Shown: in pieces, positions 50,617 through 63,400 of the stretch
Layout: each line of letters opens with the position of its first letter
Numbering within the stretch: position 1 is the first letter of the stretch
Assembly (NCBI RefSeq): GCF_963676685.1
Contig: NC_092347.1
Span: forward strand, 62,992,001 to 63,056,000
Direction of reading: 5' to 3'
DNA length: 64,000 nt
From: Mytilus edulis
Taxonomy: Eukaryota
Notes under the pieces: model-generated
What the model was told of the DNA's origin: nothing
Databases searched by the model: none
The model's input: the letters and a program-made list of their open reading frames with translations, nothing else
Position numbers and translations under genes: made by a program

Positions 50617-51546
50617 TCAGCAGACTTTCTTAATTTCTTTTGTTCGACGCTCGTATTCGAGTAGATTTTTTGGTCTGACTCCTCCTGCCTTCATGGGTGG
50701 ACAAAATGAATCAAATGTTTTGTCCCAGTGATTAAAGAACGGAGAGAAGTTGGTAAGCGGCTTCAGATGATGCATGTCGTGTTTAGGTGCTCCACCAATC
50801 ATCCCAAATGGAAGGATGTTATTGAGACTGAAAGGAAGATCAAAACCAATATGAGCTTCCACACTCACGACGATGCTCAGCAGCATGTACGACCATGTTG
50901 TCATGGGATGGCATTTGAAAAACCACGTATTTGTAGTGGTCAGGAACCCAACGGTGACCAGTTCCCATGGGTGGAGATACTGTGTGACCCAGACAAATGG
51001 ACTGTGGTACCTGTGATGTACAGAATGGATATGCTTGTAGAGAAATCTCACCTTGTGGTGGGTCCAGTGCCAAACAAAGTATTGGAAGTCGAATACTATT
51101 AAACTGGCAATCTGTTGCCAAACAAATTCAAACCAGCTTGGTGCCAATTCTGGAAGTGGTGTAGGCGGTGTCCATATCATTTGTCCGACTGCGGCAGGGA
51201 GGATAAAAAGCACATGATTCCAAAATGTTAGCTGTAATGTATCAAATACCTGATCGAGTGTTACTTCTTTGTCAGTTTGAATTTTGTATTTTTGAATCCA
51301 TTTCCATTTTTTTCCATATATATCCGCAATCATAAATGGTGTACATAGCGAAAAGTAAAATGCTACAGATAGAAAAACCGGGAAAAGAGGGGAACTAACG
51401 AGATCCTCCCTGCCGAGTCTAAAATCCCATATAACTTGTAGAAGAGATCGTCCGCTGGATAATGCATTATTTCTCACAACACCGGTTAATACGTCAGATG
51501 TGTTTATATATAATGCTCTTCCAAATTCTAAAATTCCTTCAGTCAT
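50617..51546 (-). CDS. CH25H: Cholesterol 25-hydroxylase-like protein (fatty acid hydroxylase/sterol desaturase family), intronless, 309 aa
   Basis: Uninterrupted ORF from ATG at 51546. Three His boxes (HWTHH, HSVHH, HDMHH) and CH25H-type motifs [47 protein letters not shown]. Single-exon like vertebrate CH25H. Confidence 0.9.
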
Positions 51547-51577
51547 ACTTGTGTATAAGCAAAAATTAATAAAATAC

Positions 51578-51589
51578 GAAAAGCGAAAC
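51578..51589. promoter_or_regulatory. IRF-binding element-like motif upstream of the CH25H-like ATG
   Basis: GAAAAGCGAAAC matches the IRF-E consensus GAAAAGYGAAAS, 32-43 nt upstream of the start codon. Confidence 0.4.
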
Positions 51590-52678
51590 ACAGAATGTTA
51601 CGTCCCTCTTTCCCGGTCTTGGCTCCTAATCCTATCAAAGCAACATTGTAAATATAGTCCGTTTATACAAAACGAAGGATTATATTATAAATGTGTTATC
51701 ATATCAACAACACGCTTATTCAGCTTGAGGCACACACACAGGAAAATATCGATTGAATGATGAAGATATCAATTATCACTTGAGGATACTAAGATTTTTA
51801 AAAGGAAATTACTTTACAAAGTAACAAATACTACAAGACATTATTACTTCTCAATTAATTACAAACGGTTCATAAATTTCTTTAACAATAATATAATGAC
51901 TGTGTCAAATCTTTTGGTCGAGGTAATTATAAACAATAGACAAATACTATGTCTGATTTTTTACGATGTTTCGTACACACGTACGTAAATTGACACATGA
52001 GAATATACCAGTTTATAATTGTTTATAAATACCTTGACCAAACGATTTTGTGACAGATGCATGTGTCGACCAGTGTTTTATTTTACTATTATATATATTT
52101 ATGTATTTTGTATTTTTTTCGTCACAAGCTGTTATTTGGTATATGCTAAAGATTATTATTATGAATTTTCAAAAGATTACGATTTTGAAGAGTAGCTGAT
52201 CGTAGCTCAGGATCTGTCATAAACGCTTAATTAAAAATTACAAACAACTCAAAAGACATCTAGAGATCTATATGCGCTCTATATATCGCACAATCTCAAG
52301 GGTTGAATTGGGCATACAATAATAATAATACAATATTTTATTAAAGTGTCACCTATGGACATCCTTGCACTTCTGGGTCGAGCCTGGCAGTAATTAAATC
52401 GGGCGTCTATTTGTTGTAAAGAAAGTATTAATACCGCGGCAGACTCAGTCAAGTTCTCTGCACTTTAAAAAAATGCATTGCAACACTTTCAGGGGGTCCC
52501 TAGGTAACCTGTTACAATACAAAGTTTGCCTTATTCAGCATAACTTATTTCCATATGGTAGTTCAGATCCCGCTATAAACCCGAGTAAACATATTTTAAA
52601 AATTCTACCTATTGTTTTCATTATCAATTTGTTCTTGTTCTAAGTACACATAAATTAATTGTTTGTCACTGGACACTA

Positions 52679-53893: not shown

Positions 53894-54815
53894 CTGCGTA
53901 TTTCTTCTCACAGACTAAGAATTGAACAAGGTCGCTATCAGGGTACTCTCAGACAAGACAGGATATGTCTCAGGTGCACCTCAAATGAAGTTAATGATGA
54001 AAAACATTTTTATTCTCTCATCTCAAGATTAGAGAAATTGTTTAAATTCCACTATTAGCTCACTATGCCCTAACTTTATGTATTTGATTCCTAGCCAAAA
54101 ACTGATATGGCTTCTTATTAAATGTAGAGAATCTTGATATCTTAATATCTGTCTGTGAGTTAGTTGATGAAGACAAAATATAACTTGAAAGATAAATATT
54201 TAAATCAGGCTTTCTGCACTAGGCACGAGGTTGGCATGGTGGGGTATAGGACACATCGTATAAGTTCTATTACCTTTCTGTTTGTGATATTTTTTTTTAT
54301 CAAACTGCTAATATTTTATCCTTTTCGTAATATGTGCACTTTGGAATGTCAATTAGCATTGTCCCTTGGTGCCTCTTGCAGTTGTGTCACTTTAAAAAGT
54401 AGTGACTCCTCTGCACCAGGCACGAGGATGACATACCAGTTATGTGCAACTTCTTACAATATTTTACCATATCATTAGTGTCCTGATACAGTTTAATATG
54501 CACCCACCATGCCATATAGCACCGTCCCTTGGTGCCTCCTGCAGTTCGGCTAGATATATTCGGCCTACTCACAGTGTTCCTTTTTGTTACTTTCTAGAGG
54601 TGTGCCTGAGACGAAGGTTTTATGTATACTCCTATATGTATATATACATATATATAATAATAATACATGAAGACTGTTGTCTCTTATTTGTGTTTGTGAC
54701 TATGTATACTGTATTGTTTATCATATTTGTAAAATAATAATATTGTAATGATATTATTATCATGCTCCTTGTGAGCCCATTTTATGGAAATAAAGAATTT
54801 CTTCTTCTTCTTCTT
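53894..54815 (+). mobile_element. 5'-truncated LINE 3' end (RTE-X-like ORF2 C-terminal zinc-finger region, 3' UTR, (CTT)n tail)
   Basis: Translates LRISSHRLRIEQGRYQGTLRQDRICLRCTSNEVNDEKHFLF, then frameshifted LCPNF...KLIWLL, stop near 54183. AATAAA at about 54789 followed by a (TTC)n tail. Clade assignment is from motif recall. Confidence 0.85.
54214..54544 (+). ncRNA. Candidate structured RNA element (two motif copies) in LINE 3' UTR
   Basis: Two copies each of CTGCA-nn-AGGCACGAGG and AGCAYYGTCCCTTGGTGCCT-nn-TGCAG, with extensive internal complementarity; see findings. Confidence 0.7.
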
Positions 54816-54992
54816 ATACTATCTGGTATCTATATGATGTCAATATATATGATTGATTGATTAGTGTTAAACTGCACTTTCGCCACTATTGTACTATTTC
54901 GTGGCGGTCAGTTTTTATTGGTGGAGGAAGCCGGAGTGCTCTGAGAGAACAAACGACCTTCGGCAGAAAAACTGACAAGTCGAGTCAAGTAA

Positions 54993-55251: not shown

Positions 55252-58172
55252 TAATATTGGACTTGAGCGCACCTGTCATGTGCGGAATTCGAACTCATAA
55301 TCTCAGTGTTGACAAGCTAATGATACAGTAGTTGAACTACTTAGACCATTCAATATAGTTTGTCCAAGCTACTACATATATTAGCTATGCGTGCGTTTGA
55401 CGCAATCTTGGAGATTTTTATAGACTCTAATTCGTTTACATTGTCAATTTTTAATCGGGATTGAAATTTTTCTCGTTATTTTTTTATGAACATGATAAAA
55501 AGGAAGAGAGCCCATGTTCCAATAGATCCTCTATGTAAACGACAACACCCCGTGGAGGGAATAACAGCATTATGCATTCTGCATATCATTTGCATAATTT
55601 AGAATAGACGATGATTCTCTTTCTATTAAATGGGATTACAAGGCGCATTAGCACAACATTAGAGATTATCTTAGAAAAAAACTCAATAAAATCAAACAGT
55701 TTACAAAATATGACCTAGATAATTTGGGAATTCAGTGGCATGTGTAACTTAATTGCAGACTGACCGGGCATCAAGAGACGCTGCAGTATGGCAAGGTGGG
55801 CGATGGAGGCACATTGCATTTGCATGGGGATGGACGATAGTAATTTATTTAATAAATATAATAGATGTACATACAACTGACAAGTCATCGTCGTGTATGT
55901 CTGATGCAAAATAACTCGTTTGGTGATCCAACTTGCATGATGCACCAAAGGACAATGCTAAAGGACATGTCCAATAGCACATAGTACCCAATACAAACTA
56001 ATTGGAATAATTATTTACGTCTGATTATAAATATACAAAAGAGCATATAGTAATATAATCAGATGTATCAGGGTACCACTTTGCCACCCTCTTGTCTAGT
56101 GTGCAGATAAGTTTAATTATAGATCTATAGTTTGTCTGAAGTCACCAATAAAATCACAGAAAAAAAATAAAAGTCAATACAAACTCTCAACAGCATAATT
56201 TCCCACGCAAATCTTTCATCCAATTTCAAAAAGCAGAGGCTGTTTTTTGGATGCCCCCCTCCCTTTTTGAGGGAAAATTATTTTGGTTGGTTGTATAAGA
56301 AATCAATGGAGCATAACGGGAGTCAATCAATTATGAAAATTTCTGGATCCGCCACTGTTAAGTATCGCATATTTTCTCACTTGACTATTTTCTCAGTCAT
56401 ATATAAAAGGGCAAATTGTCTAGGAATTAAAATAGTTTAAGTTTAGGATTTCGGGTTTTGAATGAATTAATATGTTTGCAGAAAAAAGGGTTTCGGCATT
56501 CCAGGAATAAACCAACCAAAAGTTCTGATAATGGAATGCTATTTATTAAACTGTTCAAACCACATGAGTAAGTTTGAAACTTGAAACTTTTGTTTCTCAA
56601 GACCCAGTCAGGGTATGTGAATATAAATCTAAACAGTATATTTCACCTGCTGATAAAGCACCTGCTAATATAGAACCCTCAGCTGGTGATACGGCACCTT
56701 TTACTGCAAATTTGATTTACCTCCCTTTGCCCATGACTTAAGTTTTCAGAGCTTACAACTATTAAAATTACGCTCTACCGTTTTAAATTTACTTTTCGAA
56801 ATTGATAATAATAAACTATTTTTTTTTTTGTAGCTTTGAACGTCTTGTTGTGTTAACCAGAGTCAAGTATTTACAGAAAAGGAATTAATATAGTTAAAAG
56901 TTTGTATTTTTAAGTGAAATTACATTGAAATGAAAATACGGTAAAACATTATATAATAACCTGTATGAATATTAATATTTGTGAGGTGCAAGGTGTATGA
57001 GAAATGTTTTTGAGAAACAATTTTAAAAGAACAATATTCAGATGCAAGAGACTGAAGGTGTCATAGCATTTATTCAATGTTTGATTATTGTGTTGATGAT
57101 ATACATGTATGTCATACACTTTAAAACATTGTCTTGTGATATGTTTGTGTAATATGTAATATATATATGCATACAAATGTTGAATAAAGGAAAAAAACAC
57201 AAATGAAAATGGTTTGATTCCACAGTAATTTGTCCGTTGTCATTTAAAATAAATTAATCATGGATTATAATTAGTTTAATTAGTTTATAGGGTTATGAAT
57301 GATCTTTACTCTCATAAACAATATGCATAGTTACAGATTACTGATACATATTAAAGATAAGATAAGATATTTTTATTCCAATGGAAGTGGCCATGAAGAA
57401 GACGATGTTTTATTACCATTAAAAAAAGCCTTGGAGCATAGTACAATATAAGACATTTAAAAAAAGATACAACAATATTTTAGTATACACACATAGAGAA
57501 GAAAAGGCAGTTTGAACATCATGAACAACACATATATAAATATAGTTATTAGATATATGAAGATTTGGTGTGAGTGCCAATAAGACAACTCTCAAATAAC
57601 AATTTAAAAAAAAATAAACCATTATAGGTCAATTCCCTTCTTACTCAACACTAAACAAAAAGATCATAAAATAAATTGGCAATGTATAGCAAAACCCACC
57701 AAAAAGCTGCATGGCAAGGTGGGAGACAGACCGGCTCACATGGTGTTATACATGAATGTAAAATATATAATTTGGTTATGATATTATGAGCAGATGTACA
57801 AACCTGGTATATATAAACCAGTAGTTTTAACCATGTGTATTTCGGATGCTCTTTCCACACCGGGAAAGGCACCTCCCAAACCTCCAAAGAAGTGGAAGGA
57901 TTAATAAATCTGACTTTTCCCACTGCAACACAATTTCCAGTTGAATATAGTATTACTTGAATGAATATGTTTAATATATTGAGGTAAGTACTTGGATGAT
58001 ATAATAGATCTAATGGTATTGTATCTATAGATTTGTAGAAAACAGGCCCAAGTTTTCAAGAAACAAATGTATTTCCAGTTTCGGTGTCCAACTAGTGAGG
58101 AACCAGTTAAGCGGTTTATTTACCCAAGAAACTGAAACCAGTTTCAATAGAGGCAAAAGACAATCTCCCACT

Positions 58173-60473: not shown

Positions 60474-63400
60474 CTAGGATGAAAAATTTTGTCCTGCATT
60501 TTTTTTTAGTTGTAATCTCTGTCCTGCCTTTTTATTTTTCACTTTATTCGGTCCTGCTTTTTTTTTTTAGTTTATCCTGACTTTTTTTACATAAATTGTC
60601 ATCCTGACTTTTTTTTTTGCAAGTGTCTCATCCTGCCTTTTTTTTCTTCTCAAAACTCCTGTCCTGCCTATTTTTTCAAATTTCATCCTAGCCCCCCCAC
60701 CCCCCCTAAAAATCAAATGGTAGCTCCCTTACAACTAACGTGTTGGGAAAATATAGGGTATAGGTAGGTAGGCAATATCATCTTATTTTACAAACATTTT
60801 AAAGCTAGTTACTACTAGGGAATCTGTCTTACTTTAATTCAGTGCTTGGTTAAAAATGGAATAAAACGTGTTAGGGTAGACAATAAAAATTAGGGTAGGT
60901 AGGGTTAGCGGAACATATGTATATTTTTTTTTTGGCCTAAGTTAAAATAGCAATACACCAAAAGTGACGCTGTCGATCACTCGTATCATCATGAGCGTAT
61001 TTGCCCTGGATATATAAGATAAGATAAGATAAGATAAGATAAATTTTATTTTCCAAATTAGGTCCCCAGGGGGGCATATACACATAACATATATGATTGA
61101 TACAACATACAGTATTTTACGTAACATTGTAAAATAAACTATTGAAATAGTCATACAGGTATTATTTGTTAAATAAAAAAGTATTTGAGAGTTGCTACTC
61201 CAGAGATGTGGCAAACCCCATTTATTTATTTACTTTTTTTTTTCTCACTTGATTTTATAATATTTTGCTGAAAATGTATAAATATAAAATATAAAATAAA
61301 TGATTGTTTAGCTGCAACAGACACCAAGGGACGATGCTCTAGGATTGTGATCTTAAAAGCTCTAACAATCCTCCTCGTATCTGATGCAGAAAAACAAACA
61401 CAAATGAAAAAAGTTTATCTATATTCACAGCAAATAACTTATACTGCAGTAAACAGGTATTGAGAATAGTGTATGTTTCCCTACTGCAACAGACACCAAG
61501 GGGCGGTACTCAAGGAGCTGTGGTATTTACACAGTCCTCCTCGTGTCTGAAGCAGACAAGAAAGCCACATAATTAACAATTTTTCGAAATAAATTTACAT
61601 GCAGCTGTGAGAATAGACTTATCTTCTGTGTTCATAAGCCATATCAGTTTATCTCTTGCGTTAAGAGTTAAAAAGTTGGGGCAACTTTTAGTTATCTCTT
61701 GAAATAGATGATTGCGGTCATCATTAAATTTAACACATTGGAATAAAAAATGATATTCATCCTCCACATCTCCGGAGTTACAACGAGTACAAGTTCTGTC
61801 ATTTAGGAGAGTACCCTGATACCTTCCAGACTCAATTCTTAAGTGGTGTGATGAAATTCTGAGCTTTGTTAAGCTTATATATTTGCCTACTCGTAGACAG
61901 CAGTCTCTTCATGCGAATTCAGGTGTTGATTTGGTTAAGAAGCAAAAATATCAACAAAAAACAATTAACCACCAAATAACGAAACTGTGATAAAGAATGG
62001 CACATTTTATAAACATGTCTGTAGAAAAAAGATGGTACGATTAAGATTGGTAGGGAAAAGGCTTTTAAAACTGTCGCATATTATAAATTGTATACAAAAA
62101 AAATACCTTATAGTCATGATACTGTTAAATTTTGAAGAAGAAAAAAATGATTGATAGTGTTGAAAAACTAAATAAATATGTTCGCGCTCGTTTTGCGAAA
62201 GAAAAAAATCAACCCCTATAAGTTAATTTTTTGCTTAAGGTAGATTCCACATATCAAAATTTGCTGAACACGATTGCAAAACCATTGTTTTGAAATGGAA
62301 TAAGGAATCTCGGACAAATATATATTTACTGTACACGGTGACCAAAACTTTTAAACAGTCGTTTTAATCGGTCCTACTAAAAAGCGCCCGGGAAAAGAAA
62401 AAGCGCCCGGGGAAAGGAAAAAGCGCCCGGGAGAATAAAATAATAATATTTTATAACAATAATTTTTTTCCTTAAAAAAAATAAATAATCATTGCTTGTT
62501 TTGTCCTTTATATAAATGTGGATATGATGCCTGAAGTGTAATATTTTCGCAACTTCACGACAGGCGAGGATCCAGAGGGGGCTGGATCCGCCCCTGCACG
62601 GTGAACACTTTTTTATGCAGATGCGGATATACATTTATTATATCTTTTTTATGAAACTAAGACTGTTTCAATGGCTATGCTTATCAGGGTTTGAATGCTT
62701 ATTTTTAAATTTAAACCAAACTCCTGCTTTTTACCCCCTTGTTTTAACTACGGTACATGTATAGTACTGCTTTATTTGCTGATCTATTATGTGTAACTCT
62801 TAATTTTAATTTTGTTTAAATTAATATTTATCTGTTAAATTTAAGTTTTTTTTTACATTTTTCATTTTGATATCGTTTTTGAAAAACATGCCTTTAGATG
62901 TCTTACATTTTATAAATCTTCCGCATAAACTGTGATCCATTATTATCAGTCTTTCGAAATAGTATTTATAAATTATATTATTGTTAAAATTGAAACATTC
63001 ATACTTGTTTTATTACACACGTCTACTATCTGAATTTGAAAATTACTTTTCTAAAATAAAAAAAAAATATTGTGCATAACTTATTTCATCAACACAAAGT
63101 TGTCTCATGCCAATGAAATATCTATATATTTCCCCGGGCGCTATTTTTTCTTCCCCGGGCGCTTTTTCTTCACACGGGCGCTCCCGGGCGCATTTTAGTA
63201 GGACCCGTTTTAATGGCAATCAGGAACACTGTGAACCTATTGTATCTTCATAACCGATAGCAAGTATATGGGTGGGATTGTGGAAAGATTCTATGCACTT
63301 AGTTGGAATTAAGTACTCTAAAATTTCAAATGATCAATGTTGCGTTTTGATACATGTATGTTCTATTTTGGAACATCAACATTTTAGATGTCTTCATTTC

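What the first reader, a model, noticed from the sequence alone, without database searches (positions are those of the whole stretch)
54214..54544. Unrecognised covarying RNA motif present twice in each LINE 3' UTR, here as a nested, circularly permuted pair
Seen: both LINE ends have otherwise unalignable 3' UTRs, yet each holds two copies of CUGCW-n(2)-AGRYAC-GAGG-[variable stem P2]-NN-AGYAYYGY-CCCUUG-GUGYCU-n(2)-UGCAG, starting 17-30 nt after the ORF2 stop. P1 covaries (AGGCAC/GUGCCU here, AGACAC or AGAUAC/GUGUCU at 61.3-61.5 kb). P2 differs in sequence but always pairs, while the GAGG and AGYAYYGYCCCUUG strands are constant in length. In this element the best pairing is crossed. The copy-1 5' strand pairs with the copy-2 3' strand (UGGCAUGGUGGG 54232-54243 with CCCACCAUGCCA 54503-54514; AGGACAC with GUGUCCU). 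The copy-1 3' strand pairs with the copy-2 5' strand (UGCAC-U-UUGG-A-AUGUCA with UGACAU-A-CCAG-UUAU-GUGCA), closed by the hairpin GUCACU/AGUGAC. This gives one long rod carrying an outer motif and an inner permuted motif. The C/U-variable positions of GYAYY can all pair with the downstream GGUGY around a 7-nt GYCCCUU loop, suggesting an alternative fold or pseudoknot. Inference: a functional RNA module (new self-cleaving ribozyme, RT/ORF protein binding site, or translation/stability element) needed in two copies. It does not fit the hammerhead, HDV-like, twister or pistol consensus as I recall them.
Basis: partly seen in the sequence, partly recalled or inferred. Interest (0 to 1): 0.88.

Follow-up and report, generated by a model that had tools for sequence, protein, structure and literature searches.

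The report
Conserved paired RNA module in mussel LINEs
A previously undescribed folded RNA element, usually present twice and in either of two circular orders, is kept in the 3' untranslated region of one clade of mussel LINE retrotransposons; it is real and evolves like a functional RNA, but what it does (most likely dock a protein) is still untested.

Summary
At 54214-54381 and 54411-54544 (+), and at 61484-61555 and 61312-61389 (-), the same module occurs. It is helix P0 (CUGCA/UGCAG), a 2x2 loop, a 6-bp covarying helix P1, a bulged G, 3 pairs GAG/CUU, an 8-11 nt 3'-side bulge (RGNAYYNN) and a variable helix P2.

No Rfam 15 family matches any form of it. The genome appears to be Mytilus edulis. 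There I found the module in at least eight APE-type LINE families whose 3' UTRs are otherwise unalignable.

- Four families carry it as 5'half-3'half twice.
- Three carry it circularly permuted, as 3'half-5'half twice.
- One carries a single copy plus a relic half.

Helices covary: 92% and 87% of cells pair on MAFFT-only alignments, against 31-54% with slid partners. G-U pairs make the structure specific to the sense strand.

The five module-bearing families placed on the tree form one ORF2 clade. Sister families and two related LINEs from other sources lack the module but keep the same terminal hairpin and microsatellite tail.

The nested "rod" is specific to family A. The alternative GYAYY/GGUGY hairpin is not conserved.

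The function is unproven. I favour a protein-docking site on the LINE mRNA, resembling the retroviral CTE.

The parts
53895..54183 (+). Decayed C-terminal end of LINE ORF2 (family A copy, 5'-truncated). The stop codon is at 54181-54183.
   Evidence: blastn to the intact family A element L042 covers window 53895-54835 at 86% identity. The sequence was read.
54214..54230 (+). Copy 1, 5' half: P0 CUGCA, CU, P1 AGGCAC, GAGG
   Evidence: (repeat D2)
54232..54243 (+). 5' strand of the 12-bp outer P2 of the nested fold
   Evidence: perfect inverted repeat I3; MFE fold
54353..54381 (+). Copy 1, 3' half: UU, AGCAUUGU bulge, CCCUUG, P1' GUGCCU, CU, P0' UGCAG
   Evidence: repeat D1; R1 hit 54214-54381, 37.9 bits, E 4.6e-10
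54344..54436 (+). Inner, circularly permuted module. It is the 3' half of copy 1, a P0-capping hairpin and the 5' half of copy 2, closed by P2.
   Evidence: R2 (permuted model) hit 54344-54435, 77.5 bits, E 2e-26; fold z-score -4.3
54411..54427 (+). Copy 2, 5' half: CUGCA, CC, AGGCAC, GAGG
54503..54514 (+). 3' strand of the 12-bp outer P2
   Evidence: (I3)
54516..54544 (+). Copy 2, 3' half: AU, AGCACCGU, CCCUUG, GUGCCU, CC, UGCAG
   Evidence: R1 hit 54411-54544, 52.1 bits, E 4.6e-15
54764..54794 (+). Terminal hairpin of the LINE (GCUCCUUGUGAGC) and the conserved UGGAAAUAAA box. The element ends near 54835.
   Evidence: Read. The same terminal element is found in every related family, with or without the module. 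blastn places the end at 54835.
61573..61767 (-). End of ORF2 of the second LINE (family B), with the CCHC-type C-terminal motif
   Evidence: ORF list; 98% identical to L050; RVT_1 lies upstream in family B copies
61484..61555 (-). Family B module 1, a standard hairpin with P1 AGACAC/GUGUCU
   Evidence: R1 74.0 bits, E 8e-23; fold z -3.85
61312..61389 (-). Family B module 2, a standard hairpin with P1 AGAUAC/GUGUCU
   Evidence: R1 80.2 bits, E 5.5e-25; fold z -4.39
61014..61075 (-). Family B terminal hairpin, UGGAAAAUAAA box and (AUCUU)n tail
   Evidence: read; blastn places the end of the element at 61014
55753..56106 (-). Third, decayed LINE 3' UTR with a degenerate double module of family A/E type
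   Evidence: weak R1 hit 55933-55996 (15.4 bits); R2 hit 55887-55970 (22.3 bits, E 4e-5); sequence read

Best explanation
The element is a structured RNA module of the sense-strand LINE transcript. Two helices (P0+P1 and P2) hold a fixed asymmetric internal loop: a bulged G, three constant pairs GAG/CUU, and an 8-11 nt bulge reading RGNAYYNN.

Only this local helix-loop-helix geometry is conserved. Which helix is capped by a loop does not matter, so the module occurs in both circular orders. It occurs usually twice per 3' UTR.

I infer that it is a docking site for a protein on the LINE mRNA, usually with two sites per RNA. The binder is more likely a conserved host factor than the LINE's own fast-diverging proteins. 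It would act on nuclear export, stability, translation or RNP assembly.

The logic resembles the retroviral constitutive transport element (CTE). There, two equivalent internal loops made by direct repeats each bind one subunit of a dimeric host factor.

Shown here: the structure, its covariation, its sense-strand specificity, its permutation, and its restriction to one LINE clade.

Inferred only: that a protein binds it, and which one.
For: 1. Structure and covariation.
- On a MAFFT-only alignment of 8 units, 92.3% of cells pair, against 38-54% when partners are slid. 8 of 18 pairs change on both sides, which 0 of 500 shuffles reached.
- For permuted units the figures are 86.7% against 31-51%, with 9 of 18 pairs changed on both sides.
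- 48 distinct copies give the same picture.
- At least six different P1 helices all pair.

2. Sense-strand RNA.
- G-U pairs are frequent: UG 13 and GU 30 at two pairs.
- The antisense strand scores about 14 bits against about 80.

3. Connectivity is free.
- Families A, B, E and F56 have 5'-3'-5'-3' halves.
- Families C, F49 and F50 have 3'-5'-3'-5' halves.
- MFE folds give two standard hairpins, two permuted hairpins or a nested rod accordingly.

4. Selection.
- The five module-bearing families placed on the tree (A, B, F49, F50, F56) form one ORF2 clade with support 84/98.
- Their ORF2 C-terminal parts are only 52-54% identical to family A and 49-56% identical to family B.
- Their 3' UTRs do not align outside the module.

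5. Not the minimal reverse-transcriptase entry site.
- Every family, including module-less sisters with 135-180 nt UTRs, has its own terminal hairpin, AAUAAA box and microsatellite. These lie 240-400 nt downstream of the module.
- Bivalve SINEs share only 35-61 bp of the LINE 3' end (PMC11481361).

6. The loop letters stay nearly constant while the terminal hairpins and ORF2 diverge between families. This fits a binder common to all families.

7. A precedent exists for a 2-fold symmetric two-loop element at the 3' end of an unspliced retroelement RNA that binds dimeric NXF1:NXT1 (PMC4330390).
Against: - No protein binding was or could be tested here.
- No expression or read data could be obtained.
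- The module was not found outside Mytilus-like sequence, so deep conservation is not shown.
- A near-invariant loop is equally what a catalytic or tertiary-contact core would show.
- The 2-fold rod that makes the CTE analogy attractive exists only in family A. Other families have two separate hairpins at variable spacing (114-197 nt), and family G has one module.
- No sequence similarity to the CTE was established.
Confidence: 0.42

Rival explanations
1. The module is a binding site for the LINE's own ORF2p or ORF1p. It would capture the newly made protein near the stop codon (cis-preference) or nucleate the RNP. The two sites would serve two protein subunits.
For: The module lies in the first part of the 3' UTR, 17-145 nt after the ORF2 stop. 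Stringent-type LINEs are known to recognise their own 3' UTR structures; this is established knowledge for R2 and UnaL2, and a review is cited. The module is confined to one ORF2 clade.
Against: The loop letters are nearly invariant, although ORF2 C-terminal parts are only 49-56% identical between families. The terminal hairpin, the expected reverse-transcriptase site, does vary between families. Sister families transpose without the module (intact 1176-1186 aa ORF2s). The distance from the stop codon is not conserved.
Confidence: 0.2
2. The module is a new class of small self-cleaving ribozyme. Its catalytic core would be the internal loop, and alternating halves in tandem would allow single or double forms, as in the hammerheads of Penelope-like elements and retrozymes.
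For: It has a helix-loop-helix with a few invariant unpaired nucleotides. Natural circular permutation and tandem halves inside a retroelement are hallmarks shared with hammerhead, twister, hairpin and twister-sister-like ribozymes (PMC11620745). The bulge contains an invariant A preceded by a variable base. Earlier notes of this scan report twister-like motifs in other retroelements of the same genome.
Against: No Rfam ribozyme model matches any form at E up to 10. The loop differs from the twister-sister-like loops GCUCAA/GCUAG. Cleavage here would cut ORF2 from the terminal hairpin that the element needs for reverse transcription. The 5' ends of truncated genomic copies do not pile up at one position in the modules, though the sample is small and biased. 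The prior for a new ribozyme class is low.
Confidence: 0.09
3. The module is a conformational switch or an RNA-RNA dimerisation element. The halves alternate and are often interchangeable. The 3' strand of P1 can also pair with the adjacent bulge. The UTR could therefore toggle between local hairpins, a nested rod or intermolecular duplexes.
For: In families A, B, F49 and F50 either 5' half can pair with either 3' half. The alternative hairpin is intact in most units, and it is the MFE fold for F56 copy 2. Family G keeps an extra 5' half complementary to its single 3' half.
Against: In family F56 the two copies have non-interchangeable P1 helices. The alternative hairpin loses 2 of 5 pairs in F56 copy 1 and in both F50 units, while P1 itself covaries. 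Interchangeability follows trivially from duplication.
Confidence: 0.08
4. The module is an exonuclease-stalling or other RNA-stability element. Like the tandem xrRNAs of flavivirus 3' UTRs, it would yield or protect a 3' UTR fragment.
For: Tandem structured duplicates lie just downstream of the stop codon of a retroelement mRNA.
Against: No three-way junction or ring-closing pseudoknot is evident. No conserved partner for the bulge was found. No Rfam xrRNA-type match was found. The literature search found no link between xrRNAs and LINEs.
Confidence: 0.06
5. The module has no function of its own. It would be a duplicated relic, or a small inverted-repeat DNA element that entered an ancestral LINE and is carried along.
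For: The ends resemble terminal inverted repeats (CTGCA..AGGCAC / GTGCCT..TGCAG). The module is confined to one genus as far as could be tested.
Against: Compensatory changes keep four helices paired across families whose UTRs are otherwise unalignable. G-U pairs make it strand-specific. Permuted orders are incompatible with a DNA transposon. The loop letters are constant although the flanks have diverged beyond alignment.
Confidence: 0.05

Closest known systems
Constitutive transport element (CTE) of Mason-Pfizer monkey virus / SRV-1, and the CTE-like element in NXF1 intron 10
   Same: It lies near the 3' end of an unspliced retroelement RNA. It is built from direct repeats of alternating half-sites, so that two equivalent asymmetric internal loops arise. 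In family A these lie on one long rod in opposite orientation. In the CTE each lobe binds one NXF1:NXT1 independently (PMC4330390).
   Different: No sequence relation was shown. In most mussel families the two modules are separate hairpins at variable spacing, and one family has a single module. The binder is unknown. The host element is a non-LTR LINE of a mollusc.
3' UTR recognition structures of stringent-type LINEs (eel UnaL2 stem-loop, R2 3' UTR fold, SART1)
   Same: It is a structured, clade-specific RNA in a LINE 3' UTR that is conserved while the surrounding UTR diverges.
   Different: Those elements sit at the extreme 3' end next to the tail repeats and are what partner SINEs copy. 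Here a separate terminal hairpin, AAUAAA box and microsatellite fill that role. The module lies 240-400 nt upstream and is absent from sister families that are intact.
Small self-cleaving ribozymes of retroelements (hammerheads of Penelope-like elements and retrozymes, HDV-like at LINE 5' ends, twister variants, twister-sister-like 'lantern' ribozymes of human L1)
   Same: It has covarying helices around a few invariant unpaired nucleotides. It shows natural circular permutation, tandem halves and residence in a retroelement.
   Different: No covariance-model match was found. It has no three-way junction or double pseudoknot, and its loop sequence is different. Its position would sever the template. 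No cleavage evidence exists.
Tandem xrRNA and dumbbell duplications in flavivirus 3' UTRs
   Same: Duplicated structured modules lie directly downstream of the stop codon.
   Different: The fold is different, a simple bulged rod. No pseudoknot is evident, and no evidence for decay intermediates was obtained.

Membership tests
Any Rfam 15 family, including hammerhead, HDV-like, twister, twister-sister, pistol, hatchet, hairpin and VS | Covariance-model score at or near the family's gathering threshold | tested here: not met
   The whole window gave 0 hits at gathering threshold. Permissive scans of family A, B, F49 and F50 gave only chance miRNA or snoRNA matches. The best was E 0.22 at 20 bits against an 89-bit threshold.
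Hammerhead ribozyme | Three-way junction with core CUGANGA, GAAA and a UH cleavage site | tested here: not met
   The module is a two-helix rod with no branch point, and the core strings are absent from the conserved strands.
Twister-sister-like 'lantern' ribozymes | Two stems around internal loops of 5 and 6 nt (GCUCAA / GCUAG) with cleavage at a conserved CA; circular permutation | tested here: not met
   The loop strands here are GAGG (mostly paired) and nnRGNAYYNNC. The base before the invariant A varies among C, U and G (loop description from PMC11620745). Only the permutation feature is shared.
Self-cleaving ribozyme (any class) | Site-specific self-cleavage giving 5'-OH and 2',3'-cyclic phosphate ends | not testable with these tools
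The 5' ends of genomic copies show no pile-up, but the sample is small and biased.
Constitutive transport element (CTE) | 2-fold symmetric stem-loop with two equivalent internal loops formed by direct repeats, at the 3' end of an unspliced retroelement RNA | tested here: inconclusive
   The feature is met by family A, which has a nested rod. Families B, F56, F49 and F50 fold as two separate hairpins, and family G has one module.
Constitutive transport element (CTE) | Direct binding of NXF1:NXT1 to each loop; loop sequence of the retroviral CTE | not testable with these tools
No Rfam hit of that kind appeared.
Stringent-type LINE 3' recognition stem-loop | Located at the extreme 3' end beside the tail repeats and shared with partner SINE tails | tested here: not met
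   The module ends 240-400 nt before the element's end. A distinct terminal hairpin and microsatellite are present in all families. SINE-LINE homology in bivalves spans only 35-61 bp of the 3' end (PMC11481361).
MITE or other DNA element with terminal inverted repeats | Strand-symmetric inverted repeats at fixed ends | tested here: not met
   Pairing relies on G-U wobbles. The antisense strand scores about 14 against about 80 bits. Halves occur in permuted order.
SECIS element | AUGA / GA non-Watson-Crick quartet, conserved AAR in the apical loop, and an in-frame UGA in the ORF | tested here: not met
   The 5' strand is CACGAGG in most families and has no conserved UGA. P2 loops are unrelated between families. 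The intact ORF2s have no internal stop.

The most novel reading that the evidence does not exclude
The module is the core of a new class of small self-cleaving ribozyme carried in the 3' UTR of an APE-type LINE clade. It would be active as a single unit or as a double unit formed from alternating halves.
Probability: 0.09. Interest if true: 0.9.

Novelty: new variant of a known kind. Interest (0 to 1): 0.58.

Why it matters
Structured cis-elements of LINE RNAs are known mainly at the two extreme ends: 5' ribozymes and 3' reverse-transcriptase entry sites. This one is a third kind. It is an internal 3' UTR module gained by one LINE clade, and families of that clade have many intact copies in the mussel genome. 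It has been kept through deep divergence and is free to be circularly permuted.

If it recruits a host factor, it would be a CTE-like element in a non-LTR retrotransposon. It would also give a handle on how invertebrate LINE mRNAs are handled by the cell.

If it cleaves itself, it would be a new ribozyme class.

Either way it is a compact RNA of 60-90 nt, defined by covariation and with natural permutations. It is well suited to probing, pull-down and structure determination, and it deserves an Rfam entry.

Tried and rejected
I stopped there, so read laying was not used and there is no evidence on RNA ends or expression.

- Other species' DNA.
The closest ORF2 relatives from other assemblies (69-57% identity) could therefore not be inspected.
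  - 79 LINE loci from metagenome contigs gave module hits only in three Mytilus-like contigs, L054, L056 and L057.
  - A 50%-identical LINE (L055) and a 48%-identical LINE in a clam-symbiont MAG (L155) lack the module.
  - An exact 3'-half pattern found nothing in genome contigs or viral contigs.
  - L121, a human-gut metagenome contig, was left out of all analyses.

- Pile-up of 5' ends as a sign of cleavage or reverse-transcriptase stalling: inconclusive. The samples were selected for full modules or for the best matches.

- Alternative hairpin or pseudoknot (GYAYY with GGUGY): not conserved.

- Terminal-hairpin mimicry (CCUUG in both): the loop letters do not change together between families.

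- K-turn, sarcin-ricin loop, 11-nt tetraloop receptor, SECIS, U1 and 5S resemblance: considered by eye and rejected. The required letters are not conserved.

- miRNA precursor: only a chance-level mir-2319 match, E 0.22.

- The 104-aa ORF at 54164-54478 is mechanical and is not conserved between families.

- Literature searches by sequence strings and for xrRNA-LINE links found nothing relevant.

Full report
WHAT IS THERE

Each consists of:
- P0 (CUGCA with UGCAG);
- a 2x2 internal loop;
- a 6-bp helix P1;
- the strand GAGG;
- a variable hairpin P2 spanning 21 to 130 nt;
- a two-letter linker;
- an eight-letter strand RGNAYYNN;
- CCCYUG;
- the 3' strands of P1 and P0.

RNAalifold on a plain MAFFT alignment shows that GAG of GAGG pairs with CUU of CCCUUG, leaving the last G bulged. 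The module is therefore a rod. It has a 2x2 loop, a bulged G, and a single 3'-side bulge of about 9-11 nt between the extended P1 and P2.

The repeat finder recovers both half-site repeats and the perfect 12-bp pairing 54232-54243 / 54503-54514. The inner unit alone is much more stable than shuffles, z = -4.3. The two copies at 61.3-61.5 kb fold as independent hairpins, z = -3.9 and -4.4.

NOT A KNOWN RNA FAMILY

- Rfam 15 gives nothing at gathering thresholds over the whole window.
- Permissive scans of families A, B, F49 and F50 give only chance-level miRNA or snoRNA matches.
- Searching the paper library for the conserved strings found only unrelated primers.

THE HOST ELEMENT

- The genome is 1.37 Gb. 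It appears to be Mytilus edulis: a protein annotated from that species sits on a contig of exactly the length of this genome's piece C9.
- Upstream of the modules lies a reverse transcriptase (RVT_1).
- Intact relatives encode 1170-1224 aa ORF2s. Their database homologues carry an APE endonuclease plus RT.
- All related families end in a short hairpin, a UGGAAAUAAA box and a penta- to heptanucleotide microsatellite. This is a CR1/L2-like type of 3' end.
- The window copies are 5'-truncated. Family A spans 53895-54835 and is 86% identical to an intact copy. Family B spans 61014-61876 and is 98% identical.
- A third, decayed double module lies at 55753-56106 on the minus strand.

DISTRIBUTION WITHIN THE GENOME

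An exact pattern gave 110 matches against 53 for the reversed control. A covariance model (R1) then gave 150 scored hits down to E 1e-10, all that were scored.

In the fetched loci I recognise at least eight LINE families with the module.

| Families | Order of halves |
|---|---|
| A, B, E, F56 | 5'half-3'half-5'half-3'half |
| C, F49, F50 | 3'half-5'half-3'half-5'half |
| G | one module plus a relic 5' half |

In C, F49 and F50 the native unit is the permuted one. It is closed by P2 and has P0 capped by a hairpin.

A second model built from permuted units (R2) finds these at E 1e-26 to 1e-28. It also finds the inner unit of the window at E 2e-26.

The permutation is therefore real. It is the normal state in part of the clade, not a peculiarity of this locus.

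COVARIATION

| Alignment | Cells paired | With slid partners | Pairs changed on both sides |
|---|---|---|---|
| 8 units, MAFFT only | 92.3% | 38-54% | 8 of 18 (0 of 500 shuffles reach this) |
| 5 permuted units, MAFFT only | 86.7% | 31-51% | 9 of 18 |
| 48 distinct copies, fitted to the model, so it leans towards the structure | 89.5% | 33-57% | 12 of 18 |

- P1 takes at least six different sequences that all pair. Examples are AGGCAC/GUGCCU, AGACAC/GUGUCU, GAUCAU/AUGAUC, AAGUAC/GUGCUU, GGUCAU/AUGACC and UGAUAC/GUAUCA.
- The P1 extension changes from U-A to C-G in F49.
- Frequent G-U pairs, and the roughly 66-bit gap between sense and antisense scores, show that the sense strand is the one that folds. 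This excludes a DNA inverted-repeat element.

WHAT IS NOT CONSERVED

- The alternative hairpin (GYAYY with GGUGY around GYCCCUU) is intact in most units. It loses two of five pairs in F56 copy 1 and in both F50 units, where P1 changed and the bulge did not follow. It may be a folding intermediate, but it is not under the same constraint as P1.
- The crossed rod needs interchangeable halves. In F56 the two copies have different P1 helices and cannot cross-pair.
- The distance from the stop codon ranges from 17 to 145 nt.
- The spacing of the two modules ranges from 114 to 197 nt.

EVOLUTION

On a tree of the ORF2 C-terminal 480 residues, the five placed module-bearing families (A, B, F49, F50, F56) form one clade with support 84/98. 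Families C, E and G were not placed, because no intact ORF2 of theirs was in hand.

Outside that clade lie two intact sister families of the same genome (3' UTRs of 135-180 nt) and a 50%-identical LINE from a metagenome contig. All of these lack the module.

A 48%-identical LINE found in a clam-symbiont MAG also lacks it, despite a UTR of about 590 nt. Both models were run on it with filters off.

The module-bearing families have UTRs of 520-690 nt. Their ORF2 C-terminal parts are only 52-54% identical to family A and 49-56% identical to family B. Their UTRs do not align outside the module. One gain followed by long retention is the simplest reading.

Only three contigs with near-identical or family-level matches to this genome's families, presumably Mytilus-derived, carry the module among 79 metagenome loci.

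HOW IT PROBABLY WORKS

Shown:
- it is a sense-strand RNA module whose only conserved requirement is the local helix-loop-helix geometry and about ten loop and closing letters;
- it is usually doubled.

Inferred:
- It is probably not the minimal site where reverse transcription starts. Every family has a separate terminal hairpin next to the tail. Sister families manage without the module. Bivalve SINEs borrow only the last 35-61 bp of LINE 3' ends (PMC11481361).
- The loop letters stay the same in families whose own proteins and terminal hairpins have diverged. This points to a partner that is the same for all families, namely a host protein, or to an intrinsic RNA activity.

The closest precedent in logic is the retroviral CTE. 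It is a roughly 130-nt, 2-fold symmetric stem-loop at the 3' end of an unspliced genome, and each of its two lobes binds one NXF1:NXT1 of a dimer (PMC4330390). Family A reproduces that geometry. The other families present the same two loops on separate hairpins.

I therefore rank the explanations as follows:

| Explanation | Confidence |
|---|---|
| Two-site docking platform for a host factor acting on export, stability, translation or RNP assembly | about 0.4 |
| Docking of the LINE's own protein | about 0.2 |
| New self-cleaving ribozyme | about 0.1 |
| Conformational switch or RNA-RNA dimerisation element | below 0.1 |
| Exonuclease-stalling or stability element | below 0.1 |
| No function of its own | below 0.1 |

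The ribozyme reading keeps some weight because permutation, tandem halves and a small invariant core in a retroelement are typical of ribozymes (PMC11620745). Against it:
- no known class matches;
- cleavage would cut ORF2 from the 3' end that the element needs;
- the 5' ends of genomic copies do not cluster, on a small and biased sample.

LIMITS

- No read-level or expression evidence was obtained.
- There is no cross-genus comparison.
- The family names are mine.
- Family counts rest on the loci I could fetch.
- E-values of R1 and R2 are rough because calibration was shortened.
- One metagenome locus from a human-gut sample (L121) was left out of all analyses.

VERDICT

This is a real, previously undescribed, covarying and naturally permuted RNA module of a mussel LINE clade. 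Its function is open.

Noticed in passing
window 55753-56106 (-): A third, decayed LINE 3' UTR carries a degenerate double module related to families A and E. It was not in the finding.
   Followed up: partly
window 54785-54794 (+), 61046-61056 (-); L035, L042, L043, L045, L046, L050, L055, L155: All related LINE families, with or without the module, end in a short hairpin, then a conserved (UGG)AAAUAAA box that contains a canonical AAUAAA signal, then a 5-7 nt microsatellite. This also holds for two LINEs from other sources. The transcripts may therefore be cleaved and polyadenylated inside the tail repeats.
   Followed up: no
window 50617-51591 (-): A 324-aa ORF has histidine boxes (HHK..., [13 protein letters not shown]) typical of the fatty-acid hydroxylase / sterol desaturase superfamily. 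It is probably a host gene exon next to the LINE insertions.
   Followed up: no
L155 (JBEVVR010000154.1, MAG of Candidatus Thiodiazotropha sp.): This 3.7-kb contig of a bacterial symbiont MAG is an animal APE-type LINE, 48% identical to the mussel ORF2, with a terminal hairpin and an (ATCTTGT)n tail. It is almost certainly host contamination of the MAG.
   Followed up: partly
G000 as a whole; P0068: The genome is very probably Mytilus edulis. An NCBI protein named from that species lies on a contig of 88,296,451 bases, exactly the length of piece C9.
   Followed up: partly
L043, L044, L047 and L046, L052 versus L034, L035, L042, L045, L050: The module-less sister families have 3' UTRs of 135-180 nt, while module-bearing families have 520-690 nt. 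The clade gained a block of some 400-500 nt, and only the modules of that block are conserved.
   Followed up: partly
L134 975-1002; L033 1650-1680: Family G keeps a lone extra 5' half (GUGCA CU ..GGACAU AGAA) downstream of its single module. This half is still complementary to the module's P1 3' strand. It is either a relic of a second unit or an alternative partner.
   Followed up: partly
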